Below are positions 2,831 through 64,000 of a DNA stretch of 64,000 nucleotides, in pieces (position 1 is the stretch's first letter; every line of letters starts with the position of its first letter). The position numbers and the translations under genes are program-made. A model generated the notes under the pieces. It saw only the letters and a program-made list of their open reading frames with translations, had not been told where the DNA came from and ran no database searches. The stretch covers positions 16,106,194 through 16,170,193 of the forward strand of contig NC_068987.1 of assembly GCF_001194135.2 (NCBI RefSeq), written 5' to 3'. The DNA is from Octopus bimaculoides. Taxonomy: Eukaryota.

Positions 2831-3267
2831 GGAGCACTCCGTCAGTTACGACGTCGAGGGTCCCAGCTGATACAACCAACGGAACAGCCTGCTTGTGGAA
2901 TTAACGTGCAAGTGGCTGAGCACTCAACAGACACGTGTACCCTTAACGTAGTCCTCAGGGAGATTCAGCATGACACAATGTTAGACAAGGCGTCGATCGT
3001 AAGGTCGTGAGTTCAATTCCCGGTGATGCATTGTATCCTTGAGCAAGACACTTTATTTCACGTTGCTCCAGTCCACTCAGTTGGCAAAAATGAGTAGTAC
3101 CTGTATTTCAAAGGGCCGGCCTTGTCACGCTGAGTCTCCCTGAGAACTACGTTAGGGGTACATGTATCTGTGGGTTGCTCAGTCACTTGCACATTAATTT
3201 CATGAGCAAGCTGTTCCGTTGATCGTATCAGCTGGGACCCTCGACGTAGTAAGCAACGGAGTGCTCC
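2831..3267 (+). mobile_element. F3 SINE with an inverted copy of its own 3' tail at the 5' end (fold-back)
   Basis: 2831-2991 is the reverse complement of 3119-3267; termini ggagcactcc / ggagtgctcc; 5'-truncated head begins about 2994. Confidence 0.85.
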
Positions 3268-3928: not shown

Positions 3929-4712
3929 CACATACACACACATATTATTATCATTGTCATCATCAATTAATATCCGTTTTTCATACTGGAATATATATAA
4001 TATATATATCATCATCATCATCATCATCGTTTAGCATCCGCTTTCCATGCTGGCATGGGTTGGACGATTTGACTGAGGACTGGTGATGTATATATATGTG
4101 TGTGTGTGTGTGCTATATAAGTTTCTTTCAGTTTCCATCTACCATACCCTTTGGTTGGCGAGGCTATAACAGAGGACCCTTGCCTAAAGTGCTGTGCAGT
4201 GGGACTGAACCTGAAACTTTTCCCAGATAGCCATACAGTTTTCAGCTTCTCTGACAAAACTGAAACCTTATACAAATCCTATAGCAGTACCGAGACCAAG
4301 TTGTTAAATAATAAATAATGCAATAAAGTGACAGACAACACTTAGCGAATGAAAATGCCAAGGAATGACAAGGTCTTGTGACAGCCTTGCCTTATTGGGT
4401 TTCACCAGCAGTACACACCATTTACCTTTCGCTAAATGATGTGTCAGTTGTCTTTGTTCAAATGACTGCCTGCTGGCATTTTACCATTTTACCATTTTAC
4501 TTTGTAGCTAGTTGAGAAATATAAAACTATATATTACACAAAAATGCGAGTTTTCTTAAGTTTGCAATCATTCTTGAAAATAATACTGCCTGATAAGAGA
4601 AGGTAGTTGGAAGATATACAACTTATATACTGGTATATTTCATATATACTACGCATTTAATTTGTGGAAATGATATTTGGAGCTAAAGTAAAATGGTAAA
4701 GAGCAAGCATAC

Positions 4713-5485: not shown

Positions 5486-5709
5486 ATTTTGATTGAATTG
5501 AAAAATTGTAAATTATTCTGACCCAAAGTATTCTATTTTTCAAATATCCATATACAGGTGTGATATTGGAGGTAAGTAGACGACTATTTTGTGCTTTCAA
5601 GTAAATGACTAAACTTTGTATGTGATATATTTAATGCTTTTATTCAATCTTTGACGTATAAAATGTGTTAGAACTCAAAGACCAAACATGTTATACTATA
5701 AACATAGAC

Positions 5710-5897
5710 TCATGCTGGTGCCATGTTAAAAGCACTCAGCACCCACTGTAAAGTGGTTGGCATTAGGAAGGGCATCCAGCCATAGAAACCAGGCGAAATC
5801 AGACTGGAACCTGGTGCAGCTCTCTGGCTTGCCAGCTCTAGCCAAATCATCCAACCCATGCCAGCATGGAAAATGGACGTTAAAGGATGACGATGAT
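5710..5897 (+). mobile_element. RTE LINE 3'UTR end (family F2)
   Basis: ggcattaggaagggcatccagc...ggacgttaaa followed by degenerate (GAT)n tail. Confidence 0.8.
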
Positions 5898-9690: not shown

Positions 9691-9900
9691 ACCTGACTGG
9701 CCTTCGTGCTGGTGGCACGTAAAAGCACCCACTACACTCTCGGAGTGGTTGGCATTAGGAAAGGCATCCAGCTGTAGAAACTCTGCCAAATCAGATTGGA
9801 GCCTGGTGTAGCCACCTGGTCCACCAGTTCTCAGTCAAATTGTCCAACCCATGCTAGCATGGAAAGCGGACGTTAAACGATGATGATGATGATGATGATG
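9691..9900 (+). mobile_element. RTE 3'UTR end (F2), young
   Basis: ctgactggccttcgtgctggtggcacgtaaaagcaccc...cggacgttaaacgatgatgatg. Confidence 0.85.
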
Positions 9901-10298
9901 AAGAAAAGTGAGACTTTAGTACTTAAATGGTGGTGCTCCAGCAAGACCACAGCCTTTGTGCTGGAACATATAAATAAAGAACAAAAATAAGGAAAAAAAA
10001 TTAAAGGAAAAAATGTATTCAATATAGAAAATTGGGGAAATGAAAGAAGCAAACAAACAACGAAACGAGATTGAAAAACATGTCAACTCTATAATGTTTA
10101 CAAATACCGAGAATAAAACTGTTCGTTTAAGCAAGACACAGCAAAACATAATGAATGACTTTCCTTTATATTTTTTCTATATTTAAAATGGGTTTACTTT
10201 GGAAAACAAAAATGATAATTCAGCTTGTTAGCCAAGTCAATAGAAGTGTTGAGTCGTTAAACCTAATATTTACTATCCGATTAATTGAAAGTAGGTAC

Positions 10299-15735: not shown

Positions 15736-15938
15736 ACACGCACACACACATTGTAACTATTTGTGTCAGAATACATGCATAAAACAAAACATACAAATCT
15801 GTACATATACATACAGACAAAAATACTCTGTTGATATTGAAATTCCAATGATGGAGCCTTGGATCTAGATTAGAAACCAGTCTTTCTCTACTAGCCAGAA
15901 ATCTTGAAATAAAATTGAATAGTGATACACGTACATAC

Positions 15939-16390
15939 ATCATCATCGTTTAACGTGCGTTTTCTATGCTGGAATGGGTTGGACGGTCTGACTGGAGATT
16001 GGCAAGCCAAGAGGCTGCACCAGGCTCCAATCTGATCTGGAAATGTTTCTACAGCTGGATGCCCTTCCTAATGCCAACCACTCCGAGACTGTAGGGGGTG
16101 TTTTTATGTACCACTGGCACGGGAATCAGTCAGGCAGCACTGGCATCGGCCACGCTTGAACGGTGCTTTTTACCATGCCACTGGCATCAGTCATGCTTCA
16201 ATGGTGTTTTTACATGCCACTGGCACAGGTGGCACTGGCATTGGCCACACTCGAATGGTGCTTTTTACATGCACTGGCATCAACCACACTTGAATAGTGC
16301 TTTTTACGTGACCACTGGCACAGGTGACAGTCAGGTGGCACTAGCATTGGCCACACTCGAATGGTGCTTTTTACATGCCACTGGCATGGC
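15939..16390 (-). mobile_element. RTE 3'UTR (F2) with about 5 units of a ~60-nt tandem array
   Basis: (ATC)n tail at 15939; repeated ccactggca...ggtgctttttac units at 16100-16390. Confidence 0.8.
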
Positions 16391-19969: not shown

Positions 19970-20113
19970 GTCGTCGTCGTTTAATGTCCGCATTCCATGC
20001 TAGCATGGGTTGGACGATTTGACTGAGGACTGGTGAAACCAGATGGCTACACCAGGCTCCAATCTGATTTGGCAGAGTTTCTACAGCTGGATGCCCTTCC
20101 TAACGCCAACCAC
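19970..20113 (-). mobile_element. RTE 3'UTR end (F2)
   Basis: Near-identical to 21157-21300. Confidence 0.85.
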
Positions 20114-20644: not shown

Positions 20645-21124
20645 NNNNNNNNNNNNNNNNNNNNNNNNNNNNNNNNNNNNNNNNNNNNNNNNNNNNNNNN
20701 NNNNNNNNNNNNNNNNNNNNNNNNNNNNNNNNNNNNNNNNNNNNNNNNNNNNNNNNNNNNNNNNNNNNNNNNNNNNNNNNNNNNNNNNNNNNNNNNNNNN
20801 NNNNNNNNNNNNNNNNNNNNNNNNNNNNNNNNNNNNNNNNNNNNNNNNNNNNNNNNNNNNNNNNNNNNNNNNNNNNNNNNNNNNNNNNNNNNNNNNNNNN
20901 NNNNNNNNNNNNNNNNNNNNNNNNNNNNNNNNNNNNNNNNNNNNNNNNNNNNNNNNNNNNNNNNNNNNNNNNNNNNNNNNNNNNNNNNNNNNNNNNNNNN
21001 NNNNNNNNNNNNNNNNNNNNNNNNNNNNNNNNNNNNNNNNNNNNNNNNNNNNNNNNNNNNNNNNNNNNNNNNNNNNNNNNNNNNNNNNNNNNNNNNNNNN
21101 NNNNNNNNNNNNNNNNNNNNNNNN

Positions 21125-21156
<32 letters not shown>

Positions 21157-21159
<3 letters not shown>

Positions 21160-21300
21160 TCATCATCATCATCATCGTTTAACGTCCGCTTTACATGCTA
21201 GCATGGGTTGGACGATTTGACTGAGGACTGGTGAAACCGGATGGCAACACCAAGCTCCAATCTAATTTGGCAGAGTTTCTACAGCTGGATGCCCTTCCTA
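21157..21300 (-). mobile_element. RTE 3'UTR end (F2)
   Basis: (ATC)n tail and F2 core. Confidence 0.85.
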
Positions 21301-21469
21301 TATATATATATGTATATATATAATTAATAATTAAGGGTGCTACAAGCAGCACCAGCATGCTAAAAATAGCAGCCAGAAGACGACGACAACCACAAATTTT
21401 CACTGATGCACATTGATTGCATAGCACTTGATATTAGTGTAAACAATAATATACTTATATATATGTATA

Positions 21470-21675
21470 TCATCATCATCATCGTTTAACGTCCACTTTC
21501 CATGCTAGCATGGGTTGGATGATTTGACTGAGGACTAGCAAGCCAGAAGGCTGCACCAGGCTCCAATCTGATCTGGCAGAATTTCTACAGCTGGATGCCC
21601 TTCCTAACGCCAACCACTCTGAGAGTGTAGTGGGTGCTTTTATGTTCCACCAGCACGAGGGCCAGTCACACGGTA
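21470..21675 (-). mobile_element. RTE 3'UTR end (F2)
   Basis: (ATC)n tail, F2 core, start of array unit. Confidence 0.85.
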
Positions 21676-21853
21676 CTATATATATATATATATAACAGGT
21701 AATGTTAATCACCACATCAAAGCGGCTGTTCCATGTTACTACTAGTTTAACCCCAGGCAGATCTTCCGCCATCTGGTTATCAGTGCAGTGCTGCACCCTA
21801 TATATTGCTAGTAGGGAGAGCAAATCTCTATTATCCTCTAGCAGACAACAGGA

Positions 21854-21902
21854 TCATGAGACTGATTCAGTTTCAAGGTGGTTGGTTCATCCTCAGTCGT
21901 GA
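21854..21902 (-). ncRNA. Type I hammerhead ribozyme motif (C3-G8), helix II decayed
   Basis: tcacga CTGAGGA t gaac caacca cctt GAAA ctgaatcag TC tcatga; GUC site; palindromic helix III actga-a-tcagt. Confidence 0.7.
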
Positions 21903-22100
21903 GCACCTGGCTACCAGAGCGATATCCAGGATCTGCTCCAGCCAGCATTATATTGTGAACAAAGAGACCATCAGTCACTGATTTGCAACAAGCAAAATAG
22001 CTATTTGTAAAATCTCAAGAAAAGATCAGAGTAATAACTATACTAATGAGTAAAGCTAATTGCCACATCAAAGTGGCTGTTCCATGTTACTATTAGATGT

Positions 22101-22149
22101 TCATGATTGAGAATGAGCGAACCAGCTTGAAATTGAGTCAGTCTCATTA
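22101..22149 (+). ncRNA. Type I hammerhead ribozyme motif, U3-A8 variant
   Basis: tcatga TTGAGAA t gagc gaacca gctt GAAA ttgagtcag TC tcatta. Confidence 0.6.
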
Positions 22150-23139
22150 TCCTGTTGCTTGCTAGAGGATGGTAGGAGTTCACTCCCCCTGCTAGTAATA
22201 TATAGGGTGCAGCACTGCACCGATAACCAGTTGGCAGAAGATCTGCCTCGTGTTAAACTAAGCATTTTGCCTGGTGTGCTTACAATTATTCCAACTCACC
22301 ACCTCAAAGCCAGAAGAAATACTGCTAAACATTTTGTCTGGCATCAAACGATCCAGCTAGCTCGCCACCCTGACAGACAGATTGCTAATACTCAATATAT
22401 TTATTGGATCAATTAATATCAAGAAATAAAAAAGACATCAAACATATTAACATAAGAATGGCTCAGATAAAAACTAAGAAAAAGAGATATTGAAGTATTG
22501 AAGAACCACATTACATTGAAAACATCTTCACTTCTGGTTTGTGAAAAATAAATTGGCTTCATTTTTGATATCTCAACATCAAAAACAATTTTCTTTTAAT
22601 GTCAGAGCAACTTAGATGCTGTCTTTGGAGTCTAACGGATTTGTTCTTTGTTTTTAAAATAACAAGGGTTATTATGGGGAAATAAGACAGTTGACAACAA
22701 TTAATATGGATCAATTTCTAAGTTCACAGGCATTAGTATGGAGAAATAAAAAACGTACTGACATAAATAAAATTGATAATAAAAAAAAAGATTAAAAAAC
22801 TGAAGAATTTCGTTCAAAACAACTCTACTAAAAATTATTGGAAAAAAACCCCCCTCAAAAACTTTGTTATTTCATTTTTGAAAAAGTCATTTCTAACATC
22901 ATGGTGATGATAATGATGATGAAGACAATAAAAAAACAGCCGTCATCCACAAACAAGTATGACTTGGTATCATGTACCATGGAGTCAGTAATGTTTTAGG
23001 TAACTTTTGTAGTTGTGAGTGGATATAAACACTCTCTTGACTCTCGGTCAATAACTGATGAAGAATTAGGGTTCTTCTGTGTTTGTCCTATGCTTATGTT
23101 TTTTAGTATTTAATGCATTTTTCATTTATTATATATATA

Positions 23140-25165: not shown

Positions 25166-26102
25166 CTTGGATATTTTTCAGTTTTGTTGTAGTTTGTTGG
25201 AAGCTAAATACAAAGAATAAACAGAACCCCACCACCACCACCACCACACCATTTGAGCGTGATCGTTACCAGCGTCGCCTTACTGGCACTTGTGCCAGTG
25301 GCACATATATATAAATTTCAGAAAATGGAGATGTAGCATTAATATAATTTATTAATTGCGAAAGAGAATATGTTGGATTTTTGCAGTTAATGAATTATAT
25401 TAATGCTACATATCCATTTCCTGAATTTTATTTTGAATATTTATAAACCAAGATTTATACATAGACCTATTATTTTATGAATATCATTATTCACAAAAAA
25501 ATAATTGAGAATGAACCAGTAATTCATTGGATATTTTTATCCCCTTAATAAGGCTAAATTAACCTCTAATTAAATATATATATATATATATATGCTGGTT
25601 TTCTTTCAATTTCCATTTACCACTTACAAGGCTTTGGTCAGCCTAGTGTTACAGAAGATATTTGCCCAAAGTGCCATGCAGTAGGACTAAACTCAAGACC
25701 ACATGATTGAGAAGTAAGCTTCTTAACCACACAGTCATGTGTGTGCCTATGCAAAATATCAAAAGAATGTTTGCTCGTCTATTTGATAATTTTACAGTTC
25801 AATATAATAGTCTAGCATACTTTGTGTGTATAGAATGGAATCTAAAACCAGGTTGTTCTTCAAACTAGCTTCATTTTACTAATAGAATTGTATGATTTCT
25901 GTCTCAAATATCCTTTGAAGAAGTATGAATATCTCAAATTCGAATCACTGTCCTGTTTCCTATATAAATCATGTTTCTTTATTCAGATGCATGACAACAT
26001 TTTCTGAGCAGAAGACAAACATGAGCAATGTTAATGTTTTCTTTAAAGAACCTCAGTGATGTGACCAAAACATAATTGTTTGGGAAAATGAACTGAAATA
26101 GG

Positions 26103-32741: not shown

Positions 32742-33133
32742 CATACCTACGCAAGTGTGTTCTCCTTCGACTTTGTTTCCTCATAACTTTCAGAAAAATG
32801 AGTATTTTAATGAAATTTTCTGAAAATACATTTCAAATAATCACGATTATATTGGAATTTAATGTGAAAAAAAAAGTTGGGTGCGTACAGCACGCACACA
32901 CACGCACGCACGCACGCACGCACGCACGCGAAATGAAATTTGGAAAAATATTATGTGATGTGTGTTAGTATGTATGTGTTCGCGCCTATCATTTCCTTTT
33001 GCCTCGCACTAAATTCTGGTGTAATCTACACCATCTGAAAGGTATTTGCAGAAAATTTCATTAAAAAGTACCCATTTTTTAAAAAGTTATGAGGAAACAA
33101 AGTCGGGGTGGGGAGCACACTTGTGTAGGTGTG
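32742..33133. mobile_element. MITE with ~125-nt TIRs
   Basis: catacctacgcaagtgtg...cgactttgtttcctcataacttt versus aaagttatgaggaaacaaagtcg...cacacttgtgtaggtgtg; (CACG)n centre; no clear TSD. Confidence 0.8.
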
Positions 33134-35239: not shown

Positions 35240-35819
35240 ATATGGACCGTCACCTTGGTCAACACGCTCTATATTAAATAAATATTAAATTTACTTCAAT
35301 AATTAAATGAACTAGAGGCACCTGTACGTTAGTATAAATGATACAAGTTTATTAATACTGTGCCGTGTAAGGTACCAGTTAACTAATACTGGCGGCCGCG
35401 GTAATTTGAAGTTTTTACTTGTACAATTAGTACGGATTATAAGATGTTCCGGAGTATCGGTGTTGTACGATAGCCATCTATAGATTTCTTCTCCTCTCTC
35501 ATATTACCTGTGCACAACCACGGTAGCAATAAACACACCTATAACGATTAGGCACAAAGCCACACCTTTCCGTCTAGGATATATACTCGATTAGGTAGAT
35601 TGTCAACATTTAGCGTTTATTGTATAGGTATTATTTTCACGAAACGCCCTGTTCTTTTTTCCTCTCTCTCTTTCTCGACGAACGACTAACGTCTTTTACT
35701 CCTGTATGTTGTGTTGATCGATCCAAGTACCAGAATGAATAGGTAATAACTTTTATTGACTGCAGAAAGTTGAGTGATAAAATTGCTTCCTGTACTCCAA
35801 ACGGCTGTTATGTTGAGGC

Positions 35820-36150
35820 CCAGGCGTGGCTGTGTGGTTAAGAAGCTTGCTTCCCAGTCTTGTCGCTATGAGTTCAGTCCCACCGCTTGGCATTTTGGGC
35901 AAATGTCTTCAATTATAGCGCTTTGCCGACCAAGGCCTTGTGACTGGATTTCGTGTGTGCGCGCGTCTTTGTTTGTCCTTCACACTGCTTGACAACAGGT
36001 ATCAGTTTGTTTATATCCCCGTAAATTAGCAGTTCGACTAAAAAGACTGAAAGACAAAGTACCATGCTTTCAAAATATGCGTACTGAAGTCGATTTTTTG
36101 ACCAAATCCTTCAAGTTGTACCAGCATGGCTACAGTCTACTTATTGAAAC
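35820..36150 (+). mobile_element. F1 SINE
   Basis: Head and tail motifs. Confidence 0.8.
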
Positions 36151-36184
36151 AAATAAAACAATATATGTGTACATATATATATAT

Positions 36185-36550
36185 ATTCTTTTATTTGTTT
36201 GTCATTTGACTGCGGCCATGCTGGAGCACCGCCTTCAGTTGAACAGATTTACTCTTTGTAAGCCTAGTACTTATTCTATCGGTTTCTTTTGCAGAACCGC
36301 TAAGTTACAGGGACGTAAACACACCAACATTCGGTTGTCAAGCAGTGGTGGTGGGGGGAAACACAGACACACAAACGTATATATACCGCTGGCTTCTTTC
36401 AAGTTCTATCCACCAATTCCACTCACAAAGCTTTGGGTCATCCTGAGGCTATTGTAGAAGACACTTGCATAAGGTACTACGCAGTGGGACTGAACCCAGA
36501 ACCATGTGGCTGGTAAGCAAGCTACTTACCACACAGCCACTCCTGTGCCT
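36185..36550 (-). mobile_element. F1 SINE, young
   Basis: Near-consensus, CpGs retained. Confidence 0.85.
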
Positions 36551-39415: not shown

Positions 39416-39630
39416 GAGCTGGTAGAAACGTTAGCACACTGGGTGAAATGCTTAGCAGTAGTTTGTCTTTACATTCTGAGTTCAAATTTTGCCGAGGTCA
39501 GCTTTGCCTTTCATCCTTTTGGGGGTGGTGGTGGTGATAAATTAAGTACCATCTGCATACTGGGATCAATCTAATCGATTGGCCCCCTCCCCAAAAATTT
39601 CGGGCCTTGTGCCTAGAGTAAAAAAGAATA
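39416..39630 (+). mobile_element. tRNA-derived SINE family F4
   Basis: gagctggtagaaacgttagcac...gagttcaaat (B box)...gcctttcatccttttggg...gataaattaagtacc. Confidence 0.8.
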
Positions 39631-39739
39631 TTTTTATCCTCTTCTTAGTCACCAGGCTCTTCAAGACGCCTAAGATTAATATTTATATTTAGCTATAGGG
39701 TGAAAATGTGGGCAGGAAGAAAATTCCAGTGGTTGATGT

Positions 39740-44761: not shown

Positions 44762-44977
44762 ATTCGCCATTCCTTACTTACAATATTCGTTTCATTATGC
44801 ATCATCTTTTCTTTCACATGTCAGGTATACTGAAGACCCTTTTTGTCATTGCTTCAGTCCATGTCAATAAAGTTTTGGTAAAAGCAGGGAATTGTCTGAC
44901 TTAAGACAAAAAAAAAAGGTCTTCAGTATACCTGAAATGTAAATGATGGATAATGAAACGAATAATGTATGGCGAAT
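44762..44977. mobile_element. Small MITE-like inverted repeat (~80-nt arms)
   Basis: attcgccat...tcaggtatactgaagacc versus ggtcttcagtatacctga...atggcgaat. Confidence 0.7.
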
Positions 44978-46140: not shown

Positions 46141-47378
46141 TGAATTTCAGTATTTGATTGGTTTGTTATTAAAGTAATTGACCACGTAAAGACTGAAAAC
46201 AAAATTAACCCCGGCTTCATTTGAATTCTGAATCTTAATGAGCAGTGAAAATATGCCGATTCCGCCATGTTTTGAAACTCCCTAAAGCTATTCTTGATGT
46301 AGAATCGAAAACCAGATGCAATTATTTGTTCAGAAGTTTTGTTTTATATCTGACAAACAAATTATCCTTTTTAATCGTTCATGAACTTTTTGGTAACATA
46401 TTTTTTTTTTCGACTCTTCGGATAGATTTTTATGATAAGGCTTCCTGCGGCTTGTCATATAAAATATAATGTGTGTGTAAAATTCGATACTTAGCCCATT
46501 TAATCTTATCGGTTAAATCTTTGATATCACGTCTCATTCATTTTTTCTATCGTCTCTTTTTATGTACGTATACACACTTGTATATTGTGTATACACAGAC
46601 ACGCGCACATATACTCAATCAAACACGTGTAGAAGTTTGAGTGTGTGTAATTTGTAATTATAAGGTTTGCTTGTACCATGTTAGCTGTCACTGAGAAATA
46701 TATATCAGAATGTGATTTTTATGAATGTATATAGATAAATGTATGGCGAAAATGTAGTTTTGAAACGTTAATCTCCAGTATCATTGTTTCATGTTCTTTT
46801 TCCTTTGCCCTCTTTGTGATTTTAAACCAATTGGTTTCTCTCTCTCAATAATAGACTATAAATAAGTCCCATTTAAATCTATTGCTTTTACATATATGAA
46901 AACACGTCCAGTTTCATTTCATACCTTAGTCATGGCATCAATTTTAATATACCCCCTCCTTTTTTTCATATATGAAAACACGAAGAGGTTCTTTACGAAT
47001 GTAAACTTGCAAGATGTCACTGGAATATAATTTATGCTAATTTATGTCTAACAATCAGCGGTTGTGTGGTGTGTGTATGTACACATGTGAATAAATAACC
47101 TCTCGTTCCTTCACTACTTCCGAGACCATATTGAGAGTTTGGGCGTCGACTTTGCCTTTCATCCTTTCGAGGTCGATAAAATAACTACCAGTTGAATACT
47201 GGGTCGATGTGATCGACTTAGCCAATCTCCCGAACTAGCTGGTCTTGTGCCAAAATTTGAAATCAATCTTGTTCAATATGGGCGTATCAAACGTCTTTGA
47301 TCTTGGATACGATTCGGAAAGGGGCTTCTATAAATGAAGCTTCAGCTTCAATATGTACATGTTCGACAACATAAGCGT

Positions 47379-48359: not shown

Positions 48360-49183
48360 GGATCTGTTCAGCTTTGCTCACAGATTTTTAAAATTATTAT
48401 TTTTTTCAACTAAACAGTTTGAAACTGTGTATACTGCTGTAATTTCTTATGCTCAACGCAGTTCACTTAAAATATTTTTGACAAAATTTCGTATTTTAGA
48501 AGTTATTTCATGTTAAAGTTGTATTTGGGTAAGTTCAACCAATCAACAACGTGTATTCACTTGAAGAAAGCTATTGCTGTTTGCGAAAGTAATCAAAGAG
48601 GAACAATTTCTGGGTCATCTCTACTAAATTTCACCACTCTGTTCTATTCGTATGTCAGGCGAAGGACTGCAGGAAAGATGATGCCACTGTTATCCTTTCT
48701 TCCTTTCTAGTCAGCACCGTGCATTCCTTACTCTTTCCTTCTCTACTGGCAGACAACCATTTCTACACTATCAACTACCAACCAGCGAGGGAACTTGTCA
48801 CTGCCACTACAATTACTGCTCTATCTCTAACTACATGTCAGGCAAACAAATATATGTAAATAATATTTCTTCCTTCTTGGTGTTGATTCTTTGATGTTTA
48901 CTGGTTACTCTGAAGTGAGAACCAAAAAAAAAAAAAGACGTGTAATATGCAACACAGACAGTAAACAAACATAGAATAGAACAGTGGTGATATTTAGTAG
49001 GGATGACCTTGAAGTTGTTCCTCTTCGATTACTATAGCAAACATCAGTAATTTTCTTCAGCTGAATACACATTATTGATTGGTTAAAATTACCCAAATAC
49101 AACTTTAACATGAAATAACTTCTAAAATACGAAATTTTGTCAAAAATGTTGAAAGTAAACTGTGTTAAACTGAATAGATCCTA
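48358..49183. mobile_element. ~820-nt TA-flanked DNA transposon with ~230-280-nt TIRs inserted in (TA)n
   Basis: TA-ggatctgttcag...ctgaatagatcc-TA; arms 48470-48650 and 48965-49150 align; left arm has a ~90-nt insertion. Confidence 0.85.
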
Positions 49184-55981: not shown

Positions 55982-56200
55982 GCTGTGAGCTGGCAGAATT
56001 GTTAGCATGCTGGGCGAAATTCTTAGTGGTATTTCTTCTGGTTCTTTACATTCTGAATTCAGATGTTGCCAAGATTGACTTTGTCTTTCATCCCTTTCCC
56101 AGGTTCATAAAACCAGTACCAGTTGAGCACTGGGGATGATGTACTCAACTTAACCTCTCTCTGGAACTTGCTGGCCTTGTGCCAAATTTGAAACCAATGT
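55982..56200 (+). mobile_element. F4 SINE
   Basis: gagctggcagaattgttagc...tttcatccc...ggccttgtgccaaatttgaaacc. Confidence 0.8.
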
Positions 56201-56500: not shown

Positions 56501-57802
56501 AAATAGAACTGTGCCGATGACTTGAGGTCATGCAATATAAATGTTATCCCCATTGTTAAACATCGTTGGTTGGGTTTATGTTTGTTGTAGTCATCATTAA
56601 CTCTCTGTCCTGTGTGATAACATCATAACAATTTGCTGGAGTTGTGATTGCTGTTCAGGTGGTGGGTGTCTAGATGAAGTATGTGTGTGTGTGGTGGGGG
56701 AATTAGTTGTAAATTAGTCCAGTAACTTCATTGTGTTGACTCTCTGATTAATTAAGTTTTCACCACCGAAAATGAAATGTTTACTTTTTGTTAATTACAA
56801 ATGAAGCTGTGTGTGTGTGTGTGCCTGATTCTGTGTTTTAATTCCACGCTGTTTACAATTGTTGACACTGTCTGTGTCTGTAGCGTGGCTACCAGTTGTG
56901 TTTAATTTTGCTATTCTTAAATTTAAAGAGTAACAAAATTATAAAGTGTTAATTCCAGCCTCCTCCTCCTTCTTGTCTTCCTCTCTTGAAAGCAATGAAT
57001 CGTCAGGTTGTTAGATGCTCTGCTGCTAGAAATAGTGACCATATCATTCTCAAATTACCTTAAATAATAATAATAAAAAAAGATTAATTTTTTTGTTGTT
57101 TTACAACATTGATTGGCTGGAAAATTTTAAAACTATATTTCATCATTTAATATCCACTTTACCATGCATGGGTTAGACAGAATTTGTTGAAGCAGATTTT
57201 TTGTGATCAGATGCCCTTCCTGTCTCTAACCTTTCCTAGTTCCAAGCAAGGTTAATATTTTCCAATAGTATAATACAACCTTACTTGTATTGAGATGGTA
57301 CTCATTTAATGACTGTGTGGTTAGAGGCTCACAGAGGCCCTAAGCACTTAAAAGATTTAACAACAGGGTTAAATATCTCTGAAATAACATTTCACTTCCT
57401 TCAGAGAAAAGGACATGTTTGAGAATATGGTTCTAGATTATATATTCTGTCCTCACATTAAAGACAGGATGTCCATGGCTTGGGTGTCTTTGATGGTAGA
57501 TTGTGATATGGGCTGATGTGAAGCTAAACATTTGTTGGTTCCAATTGAATTTTAGATTCAACTCTACATGGCTGACAGTCGGTTTTCCATCAATCACTGC
57601 GGAATGTTGCCATTTTGAGATCCTTCTAATAAAGTAAATAGTCATCATTGGCATCATCATCATTGTTGTTTTAATGTCTACTTTTCCATGCTTGCATTGA
57701 TTGGATGGAATTCATTGAAGATTTTCCATGGCTAGCTGCCCTTCATGTTGGCAATCCTCACTTGTTTCCAAGCAAGGTAATATTTCTCCTTACACAAAGG
57801 TG

Positions 57803-58015
57803 GCGGGCTGGCAGAAATGTTAGCGCACCGGGTGAAATGCTTGGTAGAATTTGAACTCAGAATGTAAAGACAGACAAAATACCACTAAGGTTGATTTTTT
57901 GTCTTTCATCCTTTCGTGGTCAATAAATTGAGTACCAGTTGCATACTGGGATCAATCTAATTGACTGCCCCCTCCCCCCAAATTTCAGGCCTTGTGCCAA
58001 GTGTAGAAAAGAATA
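57803..58015 (+). mobile_element. F4 SINE
   Basis: Head and catcctttcgtggtcaataaa domain. Confidence 0.75.
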
Positions 58016-58140
58016 TTTTTCCTTCCACAGACATATTTTGCATGGAAAATTGGAAACTTTTTTTATATATTTGGTGGTGATGCTTGTTTACAACTGTTGT
58101 GCAATGTTCATGTGGGGAGACACAACTACGCGCGCGCGCG

Positions 58141-58195
<55 letters not shown>

Positions 58196-59589
58196 ATATC
58201 CTCAATATCATTTAACATCTGTTCTCCAGGCTGGCATGGGTTGAATGGTTTGACAAGAGCTGGCAAGCCAGAGGGCTATGCCAAGTTCTATTTATTTTGG
58301 CATGGGTAATTTCTATTGTTGGATACCCTTCCTAACTCACCCACACATATCTTTACACATATTTCTTTCGCCTTTCATCTATCATATCCACTCACAGGGC
58401 TTTGGTTGACTCAGTGCTATACTAGAGGATATTTGCTCAAGATGCTCAGCTGTGGGACTGAGCCCCATTACCTTGTGATTGTGAAGCAAACTTTTTAATT
58501 ATTCATCCATGCTGCATCCATACAATAGCAGTACATATATTTCCAGTATATCTTTATATCAAGAATTTATTCTTTGTATTTCATTTCTTTATGTTAGACT
58601 TATGTTATAACCCCAAGTAATTCGTAATTCTTTGTTGAGCACTTTCTGTGAGTTATACGTTGCATAGATGAGATTTACTCCTTTCAATTCTTGCGGACCT
58701 TATGGCCCCCATAGCTAAACAACAACTGTCATTTCCACCTTCATTACATCTATTGTTGTTGTTTGGTTTCAAGTTGTTGCTGATCGAGCAGATCTATATA
58801 AAGACGCTCCAGCTGTGACCAACACATCTTATTTTTTTTTTATTTACTTACATCATGTTAAAAACAAAATTTAAAATGAAAAATTCAATAACCTACATAT
58901 TGCATACAACACTTCTCAGTCTGTCCCACAACAGATATCCTACATTTAGCCTAATGTGTTTAATAGCTAAATTTGTCTCTTTTTCTATTTTTAAGACGTT
59001 AATATATGATTTGAGGGAAATTTGGCTGACATTGCTAACAAGTTGAGTGACTACATAGAGCAACCATTCTCAACAGTTGTATTTTTGGGGAGTGGGGTGG
59101 GGTCTATGGCTCCCTCACACACACACACGAAATGGGTATGAGTGTGTGGACAAACCAAAGAAAAGGGCACTTAACACATTTATTAGAAGTCACATGTATT
59201 TGATTTGGTTCCATGCTACTTCACATTTTGCAGGCTCCTGTTAGGGGCATTCAAAACTTGAAGTAACAGGGAATTGAATCAAACTGTTTTAAATAATATA
59301 TATGATGTGTGTGTGTGTGTGTCTGTGTGTGTGTGTGTATATACATGCATATATATATGACAAGAAATAATTTTTGTTTCTTTGTATGGAAACAAAAAAA
59401 GATATATAGGACTGTAAAAAAGAAGTGTTCAAGTGAAATTGAGATATACACAGAATAATCATTGATTAGAGAACAAACAACAAATTTGGGCCGTCTTTTA
59501 TATAACCCAACGCTTCTATACATTTCATCACATACAAATAATACCATGGCCTTCAACATCTAAAAGAAATACATATACAAGCACAGAAG

Positions 59590-60169
59590 GTAGTGGGTGT
59601 AACCAGCCCACTTATGAATACCCCTCATTCATTGGACAATAAATTTTGCTTGTGAAGACCTATTGAGGCAAGTGAAATCAAAATCGCTGACGTGGCCAAT
59701 GACAGTACTGCTTGATTGGAACTTGTACCAGTGGAACGTTAAAAGCACATCCTAGTGTGATCGTTGCCAGGGCCACAGATTGGCTCCTGTGCCGGTGACA
59801 TGTGAAAAGCACCATTAGAGTGTGATTGTTGCCAGCATTGCCTTACTGGCACATGTGCCAGTGGTATGTGAAAAACAACATTTGAGTGTGGTCATTGCCA
59901 GTGCCGCTGGACTGGCTCCTGTGTAGGTAGCACGTAAAAATACCTTTTCAGTGTGGTCATTGCCAGAACCGCCTGACTGGCCCTCGTGCTGGTGGCGCGT
60001 AAAAGCACCCACTACACTTGGAGTGGTTGGTGTTAGGAAGGGCATCCAGCTGTAGAAACTTTGCCAGATCAGATTGAAGCTTGGTGCAGCCTCTGGCTCA
60101 CCAGTTCTCAGTCAAACTGTCCAACCCATGCCAGGATGGAAAGCTGGCGTTAAACGATGATGATGATGA
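59590..60169 (+). mobile_element. RTE LINE 3'UTR (F2), near complete, with 5-unit tandem array and (GAT)n tail
   Basis: 5' part matches the UTR following the RTE stop at 37857; array at 59700-60010; tail at 60156-60169. Confidence 0.85.
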
Positions 60170-60928
60170 ATTGACTAAAAATAGGTAATCAAAATGAATT
60201 ACTAGTAATTTTAGTAATTCATTTTGCTCACCTATTTTTAGATGATTTGTATATACTTTTTCTTGACAGCCCCTTCTATATTTTTTGTATTTTTATATGT
60301 GCATATATTTTTTTTACCTTCTATGCTTGTATATGTATTTCTTTTATATGTTGAAGGCCATGGTATTATTTGTATGCGATGAAATGTATAGAAGCGTGGA
60401 ATTATATAAAGTCGTTGGCCCGAATTTGATGTTTGTTCTCTAATCACTGCTATATATATATATATACACACACATATACATATACACCTGTGTGTGTGTC
60501 TGTATGTATGTGCATATGTACCTGTCATACAAGTGGTGTTTTTCATTTCTAATCTTCTATGAGAGTATGCCCTGCCTTTGGGGAAAATTGCCTTGCTTTG
60601 AAACAGGTGAGGGTTAGTGACAGCAAGGGCATCCCGCCATGCAAAATCTGCCTGAATAAACTCCATCCGACCCATGCAAGCATGGAAAAGTAGATGTTAA
60701 AACGATGACAATGATATTGCCAATGTTTTACAATCTGGTTCAGTTTCACTGAGACCGATGTCAAAGGTCTCTTGATGTTTGTTTATTTTATTTGACTTTT
60801 TTTTTTGTTGTAACATGATCGTGTTACTCTGTGTGTATGTGTGTGTGAACATGTATTTGCATGTGTGTAATTAGTTATCTTTGTTTGTGATTATGTACTT
60901 GTAATTGTGTGTGGTTGTGATTGTGTAC

Positions 60929-62243: not shown

Positions 62244-62694
62244 TTTTGCTGAACTGGTAAGTTGTGGGGAATACACACACACAAACTGCAGGCTTTTTTT
62301 AGTTTCTGTCAACCGAATCCACTCACAGCACTTTGGTCAGCTTGAAGCGATAGTGAACGACCCTTACCCAAGGTATCGCATATCAGCAATGATCCCGGGA
62401 CCATGCAGTTGGGAAGTAAACTTCTTACTACACAGCCACATGATTTATGTTCTTAAATAAATGTGTATGTACATATGCGTATGTATGTGTGTGTATATGT
62501 GTGTATGCATGTGCATATATTGCTGGCACTCCATTGATTATGATGATGAGGGTATTTGTATGTGTATGCACGTGTGTGTGTGCGTGTGCGTGTGTGCGTG
62601 CGTGCGCGTGCGTGTGCGCGTGCGCGTGTGTGCGTGTGTGCGTGCGTGCGTGCGTGTGCGCGGCAAGCATCTCCAACTAGCAGGCCATTGCTAC

Positions 62695-62737
62695 TCCAGA
62701 CTGATTACGGGCAAAGACTCAGAAACATGTCTCTGGA
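62695..62737 (+). ncRNA. Type I hammerhead ribozyme motif, copy 1 (G8U)
   Basis: tccaga CTGATTA cggg caaaga ctca GAAA catg TC tctgga; palindromic helix III ACATGT; GUC site. Confidence 0.75.
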
Positions 62738-63037
62738 TACAGGCTTAGCTAAGTGGGGATGCTTGTCTCCCACTTGTAAACAAGGACACAGGTGTCAAGG
62801 CTGACAGGAAGCGGTGCTGCTTCCTAGGGCTAAATAACAGTAGCATTATTTCCTTCATGGGACTGTCACATTAAATTGACAGCATACAACTACTTTGTCG
62901 CATCACTGCTGCATAAATCTCTCTGAGAAATTTAGAAATGTATTATTTCTATTTTTGAAATCAGTGAATGTGTTTCACTAGAATTATTATGTTTATGAGA
63001 GCTTGACAGGCATCTGCAACTAGCAGGCCATTGCTAC

Positions 63038-63080
63038 TCCAGACTGATGACAAGCATAGACTCAGAAAAATGTCTCTGGA
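63038..63080 (+). ncRNA. Type I hammerhead ribozyme motif, copy 2 (intact core, helix III mutated)
   Basis: tccaga CTGATGA caag cataga ctca GAAA aatg TC tctgga. Confidence 0.75.
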
Positions 63081-64000
63081 TGCAGGCTTAGCTAAGTGGG
63101 GATGCTTGTCTCCCCCTTGCAAACATAAAGACACAGGAAATGTGTCAAGGCTGACAGGAAGTGGTGCTGCTTCCTAGAGCTAAATAGCAGTAGTATTATT
63201 CCCATCATGGGACTGTCACATTAAGTTGACAGCATACTACTTTATATATANNNNNNNNNNNNNNNNNNNNNNNNNNNNNNNNNNNNNNNNNNNNNNNNNN
63301 NNNNNNNNNNNNNNNNNNNNNNNNNNNNNNNTATATATATATATATTTATATAAAATCTACTGTGACTCTCTCATTCCCAGGATACCATAGAAATTCACA
63401 TTGATTTGTCTATCACATTCCTCACAGTCTACTCCACAAAATTATAACTACAAGAACAGTCTCGTCCTTCCTATTTTCCATTTCTCTCTTCTTCCTGGCA
63501 ATACAATTTGTCAAGATTTTCAGTGAAACCCCTATGACTTCTAATTGTAAGTGAATTCGTGTATGTAGTGTGCACGCATGTGTGTGTGTAGGTGGTTGAA
63601 TAAAGTTGCATAGTGTATCGTTGTGTTTACAGGTGTGAGGGTTGTGCGGTGTCTGTGTTGTGGAGGTATGATCTCTGTTCAGTTTCACTAAATTTCTTCA
63701 TGCTAGTTAGATAGACAAACAAACAACATATGTATAAGGGTGAGATTGTGTATCAAATTAGTTAATGTCAGTGCCATACTAATGTTGTACTGTAGAATGA
63801 TATATAAGATGCAGGATAGCAGGTGGTGGAATTGGTTAGCAGCCAAATTAAACACATGTGGTATTGAGTTAAATCTTGAGGTCAATTTCTGCTAGGGGTT
63901 GACTTCCCTTTCATCCCGGTAGGGTACAGTCATACACTTGGAGCTGATTCAATTGAAAATATCTCTCTGGGTCTGTACTGAAACTCTTCTCTTCCTGTCA

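What the first reader, a model, noticed from the sequence alone, without database searches (positions are those of the whole stretch)
21712..22260. Second retrozyme-like family (R2, ~351-nt unit) with a head-to-head inverted copy
Seen: on the minus strand a 35-nt segment recurs at a 351-nt period, enclosing a type I hammerhead (21854-21902, CTGAGGA...GAAA...GTC, palindromic helix III actga-a-tcagt). Its helix I extends through cagg/cctg and tagc/gcta pairings. A second hammerhead-bearing partial unit starts on the plus strand at 22098, directly head-to-head, making a ~160-bp inverted repeat. The sequence differs from R1 but has similar unit size and architecture. Inference: an independent retrozyme family whose insertion left an inversion of the kind typical of Penelope-like integration.
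Basis: partly seen in the sequence, partly recalled or inferred. Interest (0 to 1): 0.85.

Follow-up and report, generated by a model that had tools for sequence, protein, structure and literature searches.

The report
Decayed hammerhead-bearing retroelement insertion, octopus genome
This is one old, dead insertion of a short (~351-nt) non-coding retroelement carrying a hammerhead-ribozyme-like motif, of the Penelope-associated "retrozyme" kind already known from mussels, corals and amphibians; it is a diverged relative of the other such array in this octopus-type window, so it is a real but fairly ordinary find.

Summary
A 47-nt segment recurs at 351 nt (87% identical). A 166-nt inverted repeat is 83% identical. 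Each arm carries a hammerhead (HHR)-like motif at the stated coordinates.

The array is only 1.13 units, TRF does not call it, and each strand has a single motif. Neither copy is an intact ribozyme:
- Copy 1 has a canonical core but no helix II.
- Copy 2 has all three helices but a TTGAGAA core, the U3-A8 variant known from Penelope-like element (PLE) hammerheads.
- Rfam finds no hammerhead even at E<=10.

New here: R2 is not independent of R1 (62664-63241). The two units align co-linearly at 67.5% identity (0 of 1500 real-sequence controls score as well). They keep CUGAnGA, GAAA and UC, swap two helix I base pairs compensatorily, and end at the same homologous 3' position against a (TA)n tract.

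The inverted arm and the sense array abut on the template, as in twin priming of one ~1.6-unit RNA.

Best reading: a decayed retrotransposed copy of a retrozyme/PLE-associated element in an octopod genome. It is a new member of a known kind. Genome-wide copy number and ribozyme activity could not be tested.

The parts
21677..21694 (.). (TA)9 microsatellite abutting the 3' end of the sense array; likely insertion target or priming site
   Evidence: TRF. Only 3% of the window lies within 10 nt of a (TA)>=6 tract. R1 also ends against (TA)n at the homologous position.
21699..21745 (-). Segment A: first 47 nt of a second unit (partial tandem; 'tail'-like extension at the 3' end of the sense array)
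   Evidence: 87% identical to 22050-22096 at a spacing of 351.
21746..22096 (-). One complete 351-nt unit in the order A' (22096->22050), C (22049->21909), B (21908->21746)
   Evidence: GC 41.9%. RNA MFE -109.8 kcal/mol with z=-3.72 on this strand, against -92.1 and z=-2.12 for the antisense strand.
21800..21960 (-). Long imperfect hairpin (52 bp, 6 of them G-U) carrying the hammerhead-like motif at its tip; it is the extended helix I
   Evidence: z=-4.13, 0 of 200 shuffles fold as well.
21854..21902 (-). Hammerhead-like motif, copy 1. Helix I 21902-21897 / 21859-21854; core CTGAGGA 21896-21890; extra t 21889; helix II region 21888-21875 (not paired); GAAA 21874-21871; helix III 21870-21862; UC 21861-21860; predicted cleavage 21860|21859
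   Evidence: The hammerhead secondary structure evaluates at +4.4 kcal/mol.
22095..22260 (+). Inverted 5'-truncated copy of segment B. It starts 12 nt upstream of the core and ends at the B|A boundary
   Evidence: 83% identical to the reverse complement of 21743-21908.
22101..22149 (+). Hammerhead-like motif, copy 2. Helix I 22101-22106 / 22144-22149; core TTGAGAA 22107-22113 (U3-A8); extra t 22114; helix II 22115-22128 (gagc/gctt, 4 bp); GAAA 22129-22132; helix III 22133-22141; UC 22142-22143; predicted cleavage 22143|22144
   Evidence: Only hit of the PLE-type descriptor in the window. Structure energy +0.2 kcal/mol.
62664..63241 (+). R1: related array of 1.68 units (period 343) with two hammerhead-like motifs on one strand. 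It is a diverged homologue of R2 and ends against (TA)n at the homologous 3' position

Best explanation
The locus is a single, old retrotransposition product of a ~351-nt non-coding, hammerhead-bearing element. The element is of the metazoan non-LTR retrozyme / Penelope-like-element (PLE) associated kind, and the host is an octopod genome.

Shown:
- On the minus strand the locus reads: inverted segment B (166 nt), then A'-C-B-A (398 nt = 1.13 units), then (TA)9.
- The 3' end of the inverted arm and the 5' end of the sense array are neighbouring positions of the unit, overlapping by 'cta'. Together they cover about 561 contiguous nt (~1.6 units) of a multimeric template.
- R1 is a 67.5%-identical co-linear relative. 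It ends at the same homologous 3' position against (TA)n and spans 1.68 units.
- The core boxes are kept between R1 and R2, and helix I covaries.

Inferred:
- A longer-than-unit RNA, either a tandem-array transcript or a circular RNA read round, was copied by target-primed reverse transcription started at a fixed 3' site on a (TA)n target.
- The other DNA end primed internally at the B|A boundary (twin priming; the PLE endonuclease is reported to nick and extend both strands). This inverted the 5' 166 nt.
- The enzyme was most likely supplied by an autonomous PLE.
- In master copies the hammerhead would cut multimeric transcripts into unit RNAs that a host tRNA ligase circularises.

This copy cannot do that. 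It has one motif per strand and both motifs have decayed. The cDNA spans uncleaved hammerheads, so ribozyme cleavage was not needed for this insertion.
For: Anatomy and significance of the repeats.

Motif:
- Chance level 0.037-0.053 per window.
- PLE-type hallmarks listed in PMC4209133 are present: an extra nucleotide between A9 and 10.1 in all four copies, a palindromic helix III in all four, the U3-A8 core variant in copy 2, and motifs on opposite strands 100-700 bp apart.

Comparison with R1:
- With R1 as outgroup, the R2 ancestor reconstructs as a complete hammerhead using only observed states. Its structure evaluates at -8.4 kcal/mol, against +4.4 and +0.2 for the present copies.
- R1-R2 homology: 210 of 311 aligned positions identical; 0 of 500 shuffles and 0 of 1500 real 343-nt controls reach the score; the rotation profile peaks only at the hammerhead-anchored phase.
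- All 12 specified core nucleotides are identical between R2 copy 1 and R1 unit 2, at 67.5% overall identity.
- Helix I is tcatga/tcatga in R2 and tccaga/tctgga in R1, which is two compensatory pairs.
- Both arrays share the homologous 3' end at (TA)n.

Other properties:
- RNA structure is specific to the hammerhead-sense strand.
- Unit size and GC match mussel retrozymes of 350-390 bp and <45-50% GC.
- Partial tandems, an inverted 5'-truncated copy, a tail and (TA)n targeting are described for PLEs.
- Penelope elements are annotated in Octopus vulgaris, and the window shares repeats with O. vulgaris.
Against: - No Rfam hammerhead match at E<=10 in R2 or R1.
- Helix II pairs in only one of four copies and in no register common to R1 and R2.
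- The G10.1-C11.1 pair, highly conserved in PLE hammerheads, is G-U in both R2 copies.
- The hammerhead region is no more conserved between the two arms than the rest (9 of 50 against 28 of 166 differences).
- No other family member was found in 64 kb plus 20 kb of O. vulgaris, in the protein databases, or in metagenome and viral contigs.
- nhmmer and blastn do not detect the R1-R2 relation.
- No PLE reading frame lies nearby.
Confidence: 0.6

Rival explanations
1. R1/R2 are a mobile SINE-like element with a ~350-nt unit that is copied by target-primed reverse transcription, possibly by a LINE. The hammerhead resemblance is not a working ribozyme; the conserved boxes serve another role or are chance.
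For: - Helix II is not conserved, and only one of four copies pairs it.
- Rfam finds no hammerhead.
- The present motifs have positive or near-zero structure energies.
- The motif region is not more conserved than its flanks between the two arms.
- The inversion is explained by twin priming without PLE-specific features.
Against: - 12 of 12 core nucleotides are kept across 33% divergence.
- Helix I shows two compensatory pairs.
- Helix III is palindromic and an extra nucleotide follows A9 in all four copies.
- The U3-A8 pair matches a described PLE hammerhead variant.
- The outgroup-polarised ancestor is a complete hammerhead.
Confidence: 0.25
2. The locus is a fragment of an autonomous Penelope-like element, namely its pseudo-LTR and 3' end heavily 5'-truncated, rather than a separate short non-autonomous element.
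For: PLE insertions are often strongly 5'-truncated and carry the hammerhead in the pseudo-LTR. Retrozymes resemble PLE pseudo-LTRs.
Against: - Segment A recurs 351 nt upstream, and R1 repeats at 343 nt. The repeating unit is therefore ~350 nt, not several kb.
- No RT or GIY-YIG reading frame was seen in the window.
Confidence: 0.08
3. The locus is a local duplication-inversion of unique DNA (a replication template switch) with a chance motif, or a foldback/MITE DNA transposon with 166-bp terminal inverted repeats.
For: No second copy of R2 itself lies in 84 kb of sequence. The junctions show 2-3 nt of microhomology.
Against: - R1, 41 kb away, is a co-linear homologue with the same 3' end at (TA)n.
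- A MITE cannot explain segment A lying outside one arm and inside the other.
- No target-site duplication is visible.
Confidence: 0.05

Closest known systems
Metazoan non-LTR retrozymes (Cervera & de la Pena 2020, PMC7229834), e.g. Mytilus galloprovincialis repeats of 350-390 bp
   Same: - Unit size of 351 nt and GC of 41.9%.
- A type I hammerhead-like motif whose helix I opens into the rest of a highly self-paired RNA.
- Head-to-tail repetition.
- Co-occurrence with PLEs in a mollusc.
   Different: - The locus has 1.13 units and one motif per strand, so no unit RNA can be released from it.
- The motif is of the atypical PLE type, not a canonical hammerhead with loop-loop contacts.
- Helix II is poorly kept.
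- Expression and circular RNA are untested.
PLE minimal/atypical hammerheads in pseudo-LTRs (Cervera & de la Pena 2014, PMC4209133)
   Same: - An extra nucleotide between A9 and 10.1.
- A small palindromic helix III.
- The U3-A8 core covariant.
- Pairs of motifs on opposite strands 100-700 bp apart.
- High sequence variability.
   Different: - Helix II is 4 bp at best, against 6-8 bp in most PLE motifs.
- The closing pair is G10.1-U11.1 instead of G-C.
- No RT/GIY-YIG reading frame is associated with the motif.
Penelope-like element insertion architecture (Craig et al. 2021, PMC8557442; Frangieh et al. 2024, PMC11167929)
   Same: - A partial tandem.
- An inverted 5'-truncated copy abutting the 5' end.
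- The 3' ends of the two copies differ by 44-47 nt, which is tail-like.
- Insertion next to (TA)n.
- The cDNA was made from RNA uncut by the hammerhead.
   Different: - The described tail is 30-40 bp.
- The (TA)n preference is reported for Naiad/Neptune, and Naiads lack hammerheads.
- No autonomous partner was identified here.
Twin-priming inversions of LINE-1
   Same: - The inverted 5' segment and the direct 3' segment are adjacent on the RNA template.
- They are joined with short microhomology.
- The inverted part lies upstream of the direct part.
   Different: The template here is a multimeric short non-coding RNA, and the enzyme is probably a PLE RT/GIY-YIG rather than L1 ORF2p.

Membership tests
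Hammerhead ribozyme, type I | Conserved core C3U4G5A6N7G8A9 ... G12A13A14 ... U16.1 H17 | tested here: met
   Copy 1 has CTGAGGA...GAAA...TC. Copy 2 has TTGAGAA (U3-A8, a described covariant)...GAAA...TC.
Hammerhead ribozyme, type I | Three helices around the core, with II and III closed and I open | tested here: inconclusive
   Copy 2 has helix I 5 of 6, helix II 4 bp (one G-U, with a bulged U) and helix III 4 bp. Copy 1 has no helix II. R1 has helix II of 3 bp or fewer and out of register.
Hammerhead ribozyme, type I | Match to Rfam hammerhead covariance models | tested here: not met
   No hammerhead family appears at gathering score or at E<=10 for R2 or R1.
Hammerhead ribozyme, type I | Self-cleavage after H17 | not testable with these tools
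   This needs in vitro transcription of monomeric and dimeric constructs.
PLE-type hammerhead (PMC4209133) | Nucleotide inserted between positions 9 and 10.1 | tested here: met
   The inserted base is t in both R2 copies and c in both R1 units.
PLE-type hammerhead (PMC4209133) | Conserved G10.1-C11.1 pair | tested here: not met
   Both R2 copies have G...T (G-U). The C would sit in a CpG with G12, so decay is possible but unproven.
PLE-type hammerhead (PMC4209133) | Palindromic 15.2-16.2 / loop 3 | tested here: met
   R2 has ctga-a-tcag and ttga-g-tcag. R1 has catg (aatg in unit 2).
PLE-type hammerhead (PMC4209133) | Families with covariation and compensatory changes | tested here: inconclusive
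   Two compensatory pairs occur in helix I between R1 and R2, and C3-G8 against U3-A8 between the R2 arms. Only four sequences are available.
Metazoan non-LTR retrozyme | Tandem repeat with at least two consecutive units each holding a complete hammerhead (criterion of Li et al. 2026) | tested here: not met
   R2 has 1.13 units, TRF is silent, and there is one motif per strand. R1 has two motifs in tandem but neither is complete.
Metazoan non-LTR retrozyme | Unit of 170-400 nt, low GC, highly self-paired RNA | tested here: met
   351 nt, 41.9% GC, z=-3.72 on the sense strand.
Metazoan non-LTR retrozyme | Many genomic copies; expressed as linear and circular unit RNAs | not testable with these tools
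   No octopus genome or transcriptome can be searched by DNA here. The only relative found is R1.
Penelope-like element (autonomous) | RT plus GIY-YIG endonuclease reading frame | tested here: not met
   No long non-repetitive reading frame exists in the window. The element would be non-autonomous.
Penelope-like element insertion signature | Partial tandem plus inverted 5'-truncated copy at the 5' end, with a tail at one end | tested here: met
   compared. The tail-like difference is 44-47 nt, against 30-40 bp described.

The most novel reading that the evidence does not exclude
Octopus genomes may carry an undescribed and possibly still active superfamily of ~345-351-nt hammerhead retrozymes. 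It would have at least two subfamilies (R1, R2), including U3-A8 core covariants. The elements would be mobilised from uncleaved multimeric RNA by a (TA)n-targeting Penelope-like element and might be expressed as abundant circular RNAs.
Probability: 0.3. Interest if true: 0.5.

Novelty: new member of a known kind. Interest (0 to 1): 0.35.

Why it matters
Hammerhead-bearing retrozymes and PLE hammerheads are known in many animals, including a bivalve mollusc. Two full-text searches of the paper library found no report of them in cephalopods.

The locus adds two small points of mechanism. The inserted cDNA spans uncleaved hammerheads. The inversion is what twin priming on one ~1.6-unit template would give. 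Both agree with recent in vitro work in which unprocessed RNA is the substrate of a PLE.

In practice, such elements are probably filed as unclassified SINEs in octopus repeat libraries.

Tried and rejected
Searches that found nothing useful:
- Protein-database route to other R2 copies, using ORFs across R2 in two frames. Nothing for R2; one hit to the neighbouring SINE, which identified Octopus vulgaris.
- Profile search of 1.84 billion protein representatives. The only hit was a spurious tandem-repeat protein.
- Exact-pattern scans of metagenome contigs (two scans) and viral contigs (one scan) with the best-conserved R2 blocks. No match.
- Look-up of a window ORF to identify the assembly. 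Not on record.
- nhmmer with an R1+R2 profile against the window and the 20-kb O. vulgaris locus. It returned only the training sequences.

Tests that failed or misled:
- Single-sequence nhmmer and blastn do not detect the R1-R2 relation.
- MAFFT misaligned the four hammerhead regions, so the pairs were compared by hand, anchored on the core.
- No target-site duplication could be defined. The right flank is a diverged copy of another repeat and the left flank is (TA)n.

Models rejected:
- The MITE/foldback model does not explain segment A.
- The truncated autonomous PLE model conflicts with the ~350-nt unit length.

Full report
**Host genome.** The window is AT-rich (37% GC), full of microsatellites, interspersed repeats and assembly gaps, and has no long coding frame. 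A peptide read from the SINE next to the finding is 93% identical to a predicted protein of Octopus vulgaris. A 20-kb O. vulgaris locus shares many repeats with the window, up to 93.5% identity. The window therefore comes from an octopod genome; the species was not determined.

**Observation.**
- Segment A (21699-21745) recurs at 22050-22096: 47 nt, 87% identical, spacing 351.
- The arms 21743-21908 and 22095-22260 are 166 nt long and 83% complementary.
- On the minus strand the locus reads: inverted segment B (22260->22095), then A'-C-B (one 351-nt unit, 22096->21746), then A (47 nt), then (TA)9, then a SINE.
- TRF reports no 351-nt array, because there are only 1.13 units.
- No other copy of R2 itself lies in the window.

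**The motifs.**
- Copy 1 (minus strand, 21902->21854) has a canonical core, GAAA and UC, and a palindromic helix III (ctga-a-tcag). Helix I pairs at 5 of 6 positions. The helix II region (gaac caacca cctt) does not pair.
- Copy 2 (plus strand, 22101-22149) has helix I at 5 of 6, a 4-bp helix II (gagc/gctt, one G-U) after one unpaired U, and a 4-bp helix III. Its core is TTGAGAA.
- A descriptor that ignores helix II is expected 0.037 times per dinucleotide-shuffled window. A full descriptor allowing the PLE features is expected 0.053 times, and its only real hit is copy 2.
- Rfam finds no hammerhead family at gathering score or at E<=10.
- The hammerhead secondary structure evaluates at +4.4 kcal/mol for copy 1 and +0.2 kcal/mol for copy 2. 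Neither present copy is a credible active ribozyme.

**Match to Penelope-type hammerheads.** Cervera & de la Pena 2014 (PMC4209133) list these features as unlikely to arise by chance:
- a palindromic 15.2-16.2 / loop 3 (present here);
- G10.1-C11.1 (here G-U in both copies);
- families with covariation.

They also describe a U3-A8 core covariant in Schistosoma Cercyon elements, and motif pairs on opposite strands 100-700 bp apart. Copy 2's TTGAGAA is exactly U3-A8. Given 22 transition differences in 166 nt, two specified sites both differing by a transition has a probability of about 0.018. I noticed this only after looking, so I treat it as suggestive.

**RNA structure.** The unit RNA in the hammerhead sense folds at -109.8 kcal/mol (z=-3.72, 0 of 100 shuffles fold as well). 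The antisense strand gives -92.1 kcal/mol (z=-2.12). The motif sits at the tip of a ~150-nt hairpin of 52 bp, 6 of them G-U (z=-4.13).

**Relation to R1 (new result).** R1 (62664-63241, period 343, 1.68 units, 89% identity between its units) carries its hammerhead-like motif at the tip of a ~100-nt hairpin.
- I rotated the R2 unit to start 37 nt upstream of the core, as the R1 unit does. The two units then align end to end with 210 of 311 aligned positions identical (67.5%).
- No shuffle (0 of 500) reaches the score, and no randomly drawn real 343-nt segment from the window or the O. vulgaris locus does either (0 of 1500). In full-global mode the score is 30, against a null of -62 +/- 17 with a maximum of 2.
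- The score peaks only at that phase, and the reverse complement scores 12.
- blastn and nhmmer miss the relation.
- R2 is therefore a diverged subfamily of the same element as R1, not an independent family.

**What the four motifs show together.**
- CUGAnGA is intact in R2 copy 1 and R1 unit 2. R1 unit 1 has G8->U.
- GAAA and UC are present in all four copies.
- All four have the extra base after A9 and a palindromic helix III.
- Helix I changes from tcatga/tcatga (R2) to tccaga/tctgga (R1), which is two compensatory pairs.
- All 12 specified core nucleotides are identical between R2 copy 1 and R1 unit 2, at 67.5% overall identity (0.675^12 is about 0.009).
- With R1 as outgroup, the R2 differences polarise to an ancestor made only of observed states: tca(t)ga CTGAGGA t gagc-Naacca-gctt GAAA ctgaNtcag TC tcatga. 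This is a complete hammerhead at -8.4 kcal/mol.
- Against this, helix II pairs in no register common to R1 and R2. The motif is also no better conserved between the R2 arms than its flanks.

**Insertion mechanism.**
- Both arrays end at homologous positions directly against (TA)n. R2 ends ...aacattac-ctgtta-(ta)9 and R1 ends ...gcatactac-ttt-a(ta)n. The internal units read on past that point.
- Only 3% of the window lies within 10 nt of a (TA)>=6 tract.
- The 5' ends vary. R1 starts 37 nt upstream of the core. R2's inverted arm starts 12 nt upstream of it.
- The 3' end of the inverted arm (...gttaaacta) and the 5' end of the sense array (ctaatagtaac...) are adjacent positions of the unit, sharing 'cta'. 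The head-to-head junction shares 'ag'.
- The two pieces thus cover about 561 contiguous nt (~1.6 units) of a multimeric template, much like R1's 578 nt.
- This is the topology of twin priming. One DNA end primes at the 3' site, and the other primes internally.
- It also fits what is described for PLEs: partial tandems, an inverted 5'-truncated copy at the 5' end, an optional 30-40-bp tail between two RT start sites, an endonuclease that nicks and extends both strands, a (TA)n preference in Naiad/Neptune, and unprocessed RNA as the substrate.
- The cDNA spans uncleaved hammerheads, and no junction lies at a predicted cleavage site. The locus therefore gives no evidence that ribozyme cleavage was part of this event.
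- Arm divergence (K2P 0.20) and A/A' divergence (K2P 0.14) do not differ (Fisher p=0.65). This fits one old event. If the template was a transcript of a diverged tandem array, however, part of the difference, including U3-A8, may predate insertion.

**Comparison with known families.**
- Unit size, GC and self-pairing match metazoan non-LTR retrozymes, including mussel repeats of 350-390 bp.
- Li et al. 2026 report that such retrozymes derive from PLE pseudo-LTRs. [quoted passage not shown] R2 fails that test and is a dead 'monomer' derivative.
- Penelope elements are annotated in O. vulgaris, some as recently active.
- Two full-text searches of the paper library found no report of retrozymes or hammerheads in cephalopods.

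**Limits.**
- No octopus genome can be searched by DNA with these tools.
- ORF-based and pattern-based attempts to reach other copies failed.
- Copy number, family consensus, the autonomous partner, expression and cleavage all remain untested.

**Verdict.** The locus is a decayed, retrotransposed, hammerhead-bearing element related to R1. It is a new member of a known kind and of moderate to low interest.

Noticed in passing
window 62664-63241 (+): R1 is a 1.68-unit tandem (period 343, 89% identity between units) lying between a (GTGC)n tract and (TA)n plus an assembly gap. Its hammerhead-like motif (tccaga CTGATGA ... GAAA aatg TC tctgga) sits at the tip of a ~100-nt hairpin. Helix II pairs poorly, unit 1 has G8->T, and Rfam gives no hammerhead hit. 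R1 is homologous to R2.
   Followed up: yes
window 21138-21300 and 21449-21677 (also 3991-4086, 5709-5897, 9692-9902, 15938-16132, 19971-20113, 59965-60169): An abundant SINE headed by (CAT)n. It contains CTGAGGActggtGAAAccag, which looks hammerhead-like but is only a short hairpin. Two copies lie 307-311 nt apart just left of R2. The family is shared with Octopus vulgaris at up to 93.5% identity.
   Followed up: partly
window 22258-22363: The right flank of R2 is a diverged copy of another repeat family (also at 39416-39635, 55987-56198, 57798-58021, 47148-47274). It carries an internal duplication of ctaagcattttgcctgg / ctaaacattttgtctgg. The 'cta' shared with the end of R2 makes the exact boundary ambiguous by 3 nt.
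   Followed up: partly
window 20645-21124: An N-run (assembly gap) flanked by (TA)n produces spurious 270-nt 'inverted repeats' in the repeat finder (I1-I7). These are an artefact.
   Followed up: yes
window 2831-2975 / 3123-3267; 48455-48655 / 48969-49166; 59460-59592 / 60315-60449: Other head-to-head inverted pairs of interspersed repeats (85-90% identity, arm starts ~290-860 nt apart). They could be further twin-priming or PLE-style inversions, or foldback elements.
   Followed up: no
window 25311-25431, 32742-33133, 35816-36550, 44779-44969: Self-complementary (palindromic) stretches found by self-BLAST, 63-82% identity. Their nature is unknown.
   Followed up: no
window 43963 (-): A relaxed hammerhead-descriptor hit in T-rich low-complexity sequence (CTGAGGA ... 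GAAA aagttgttttt TT). It is judged a chance match and illustrates the background of the relaxed descriptor.
   Followed up: partly
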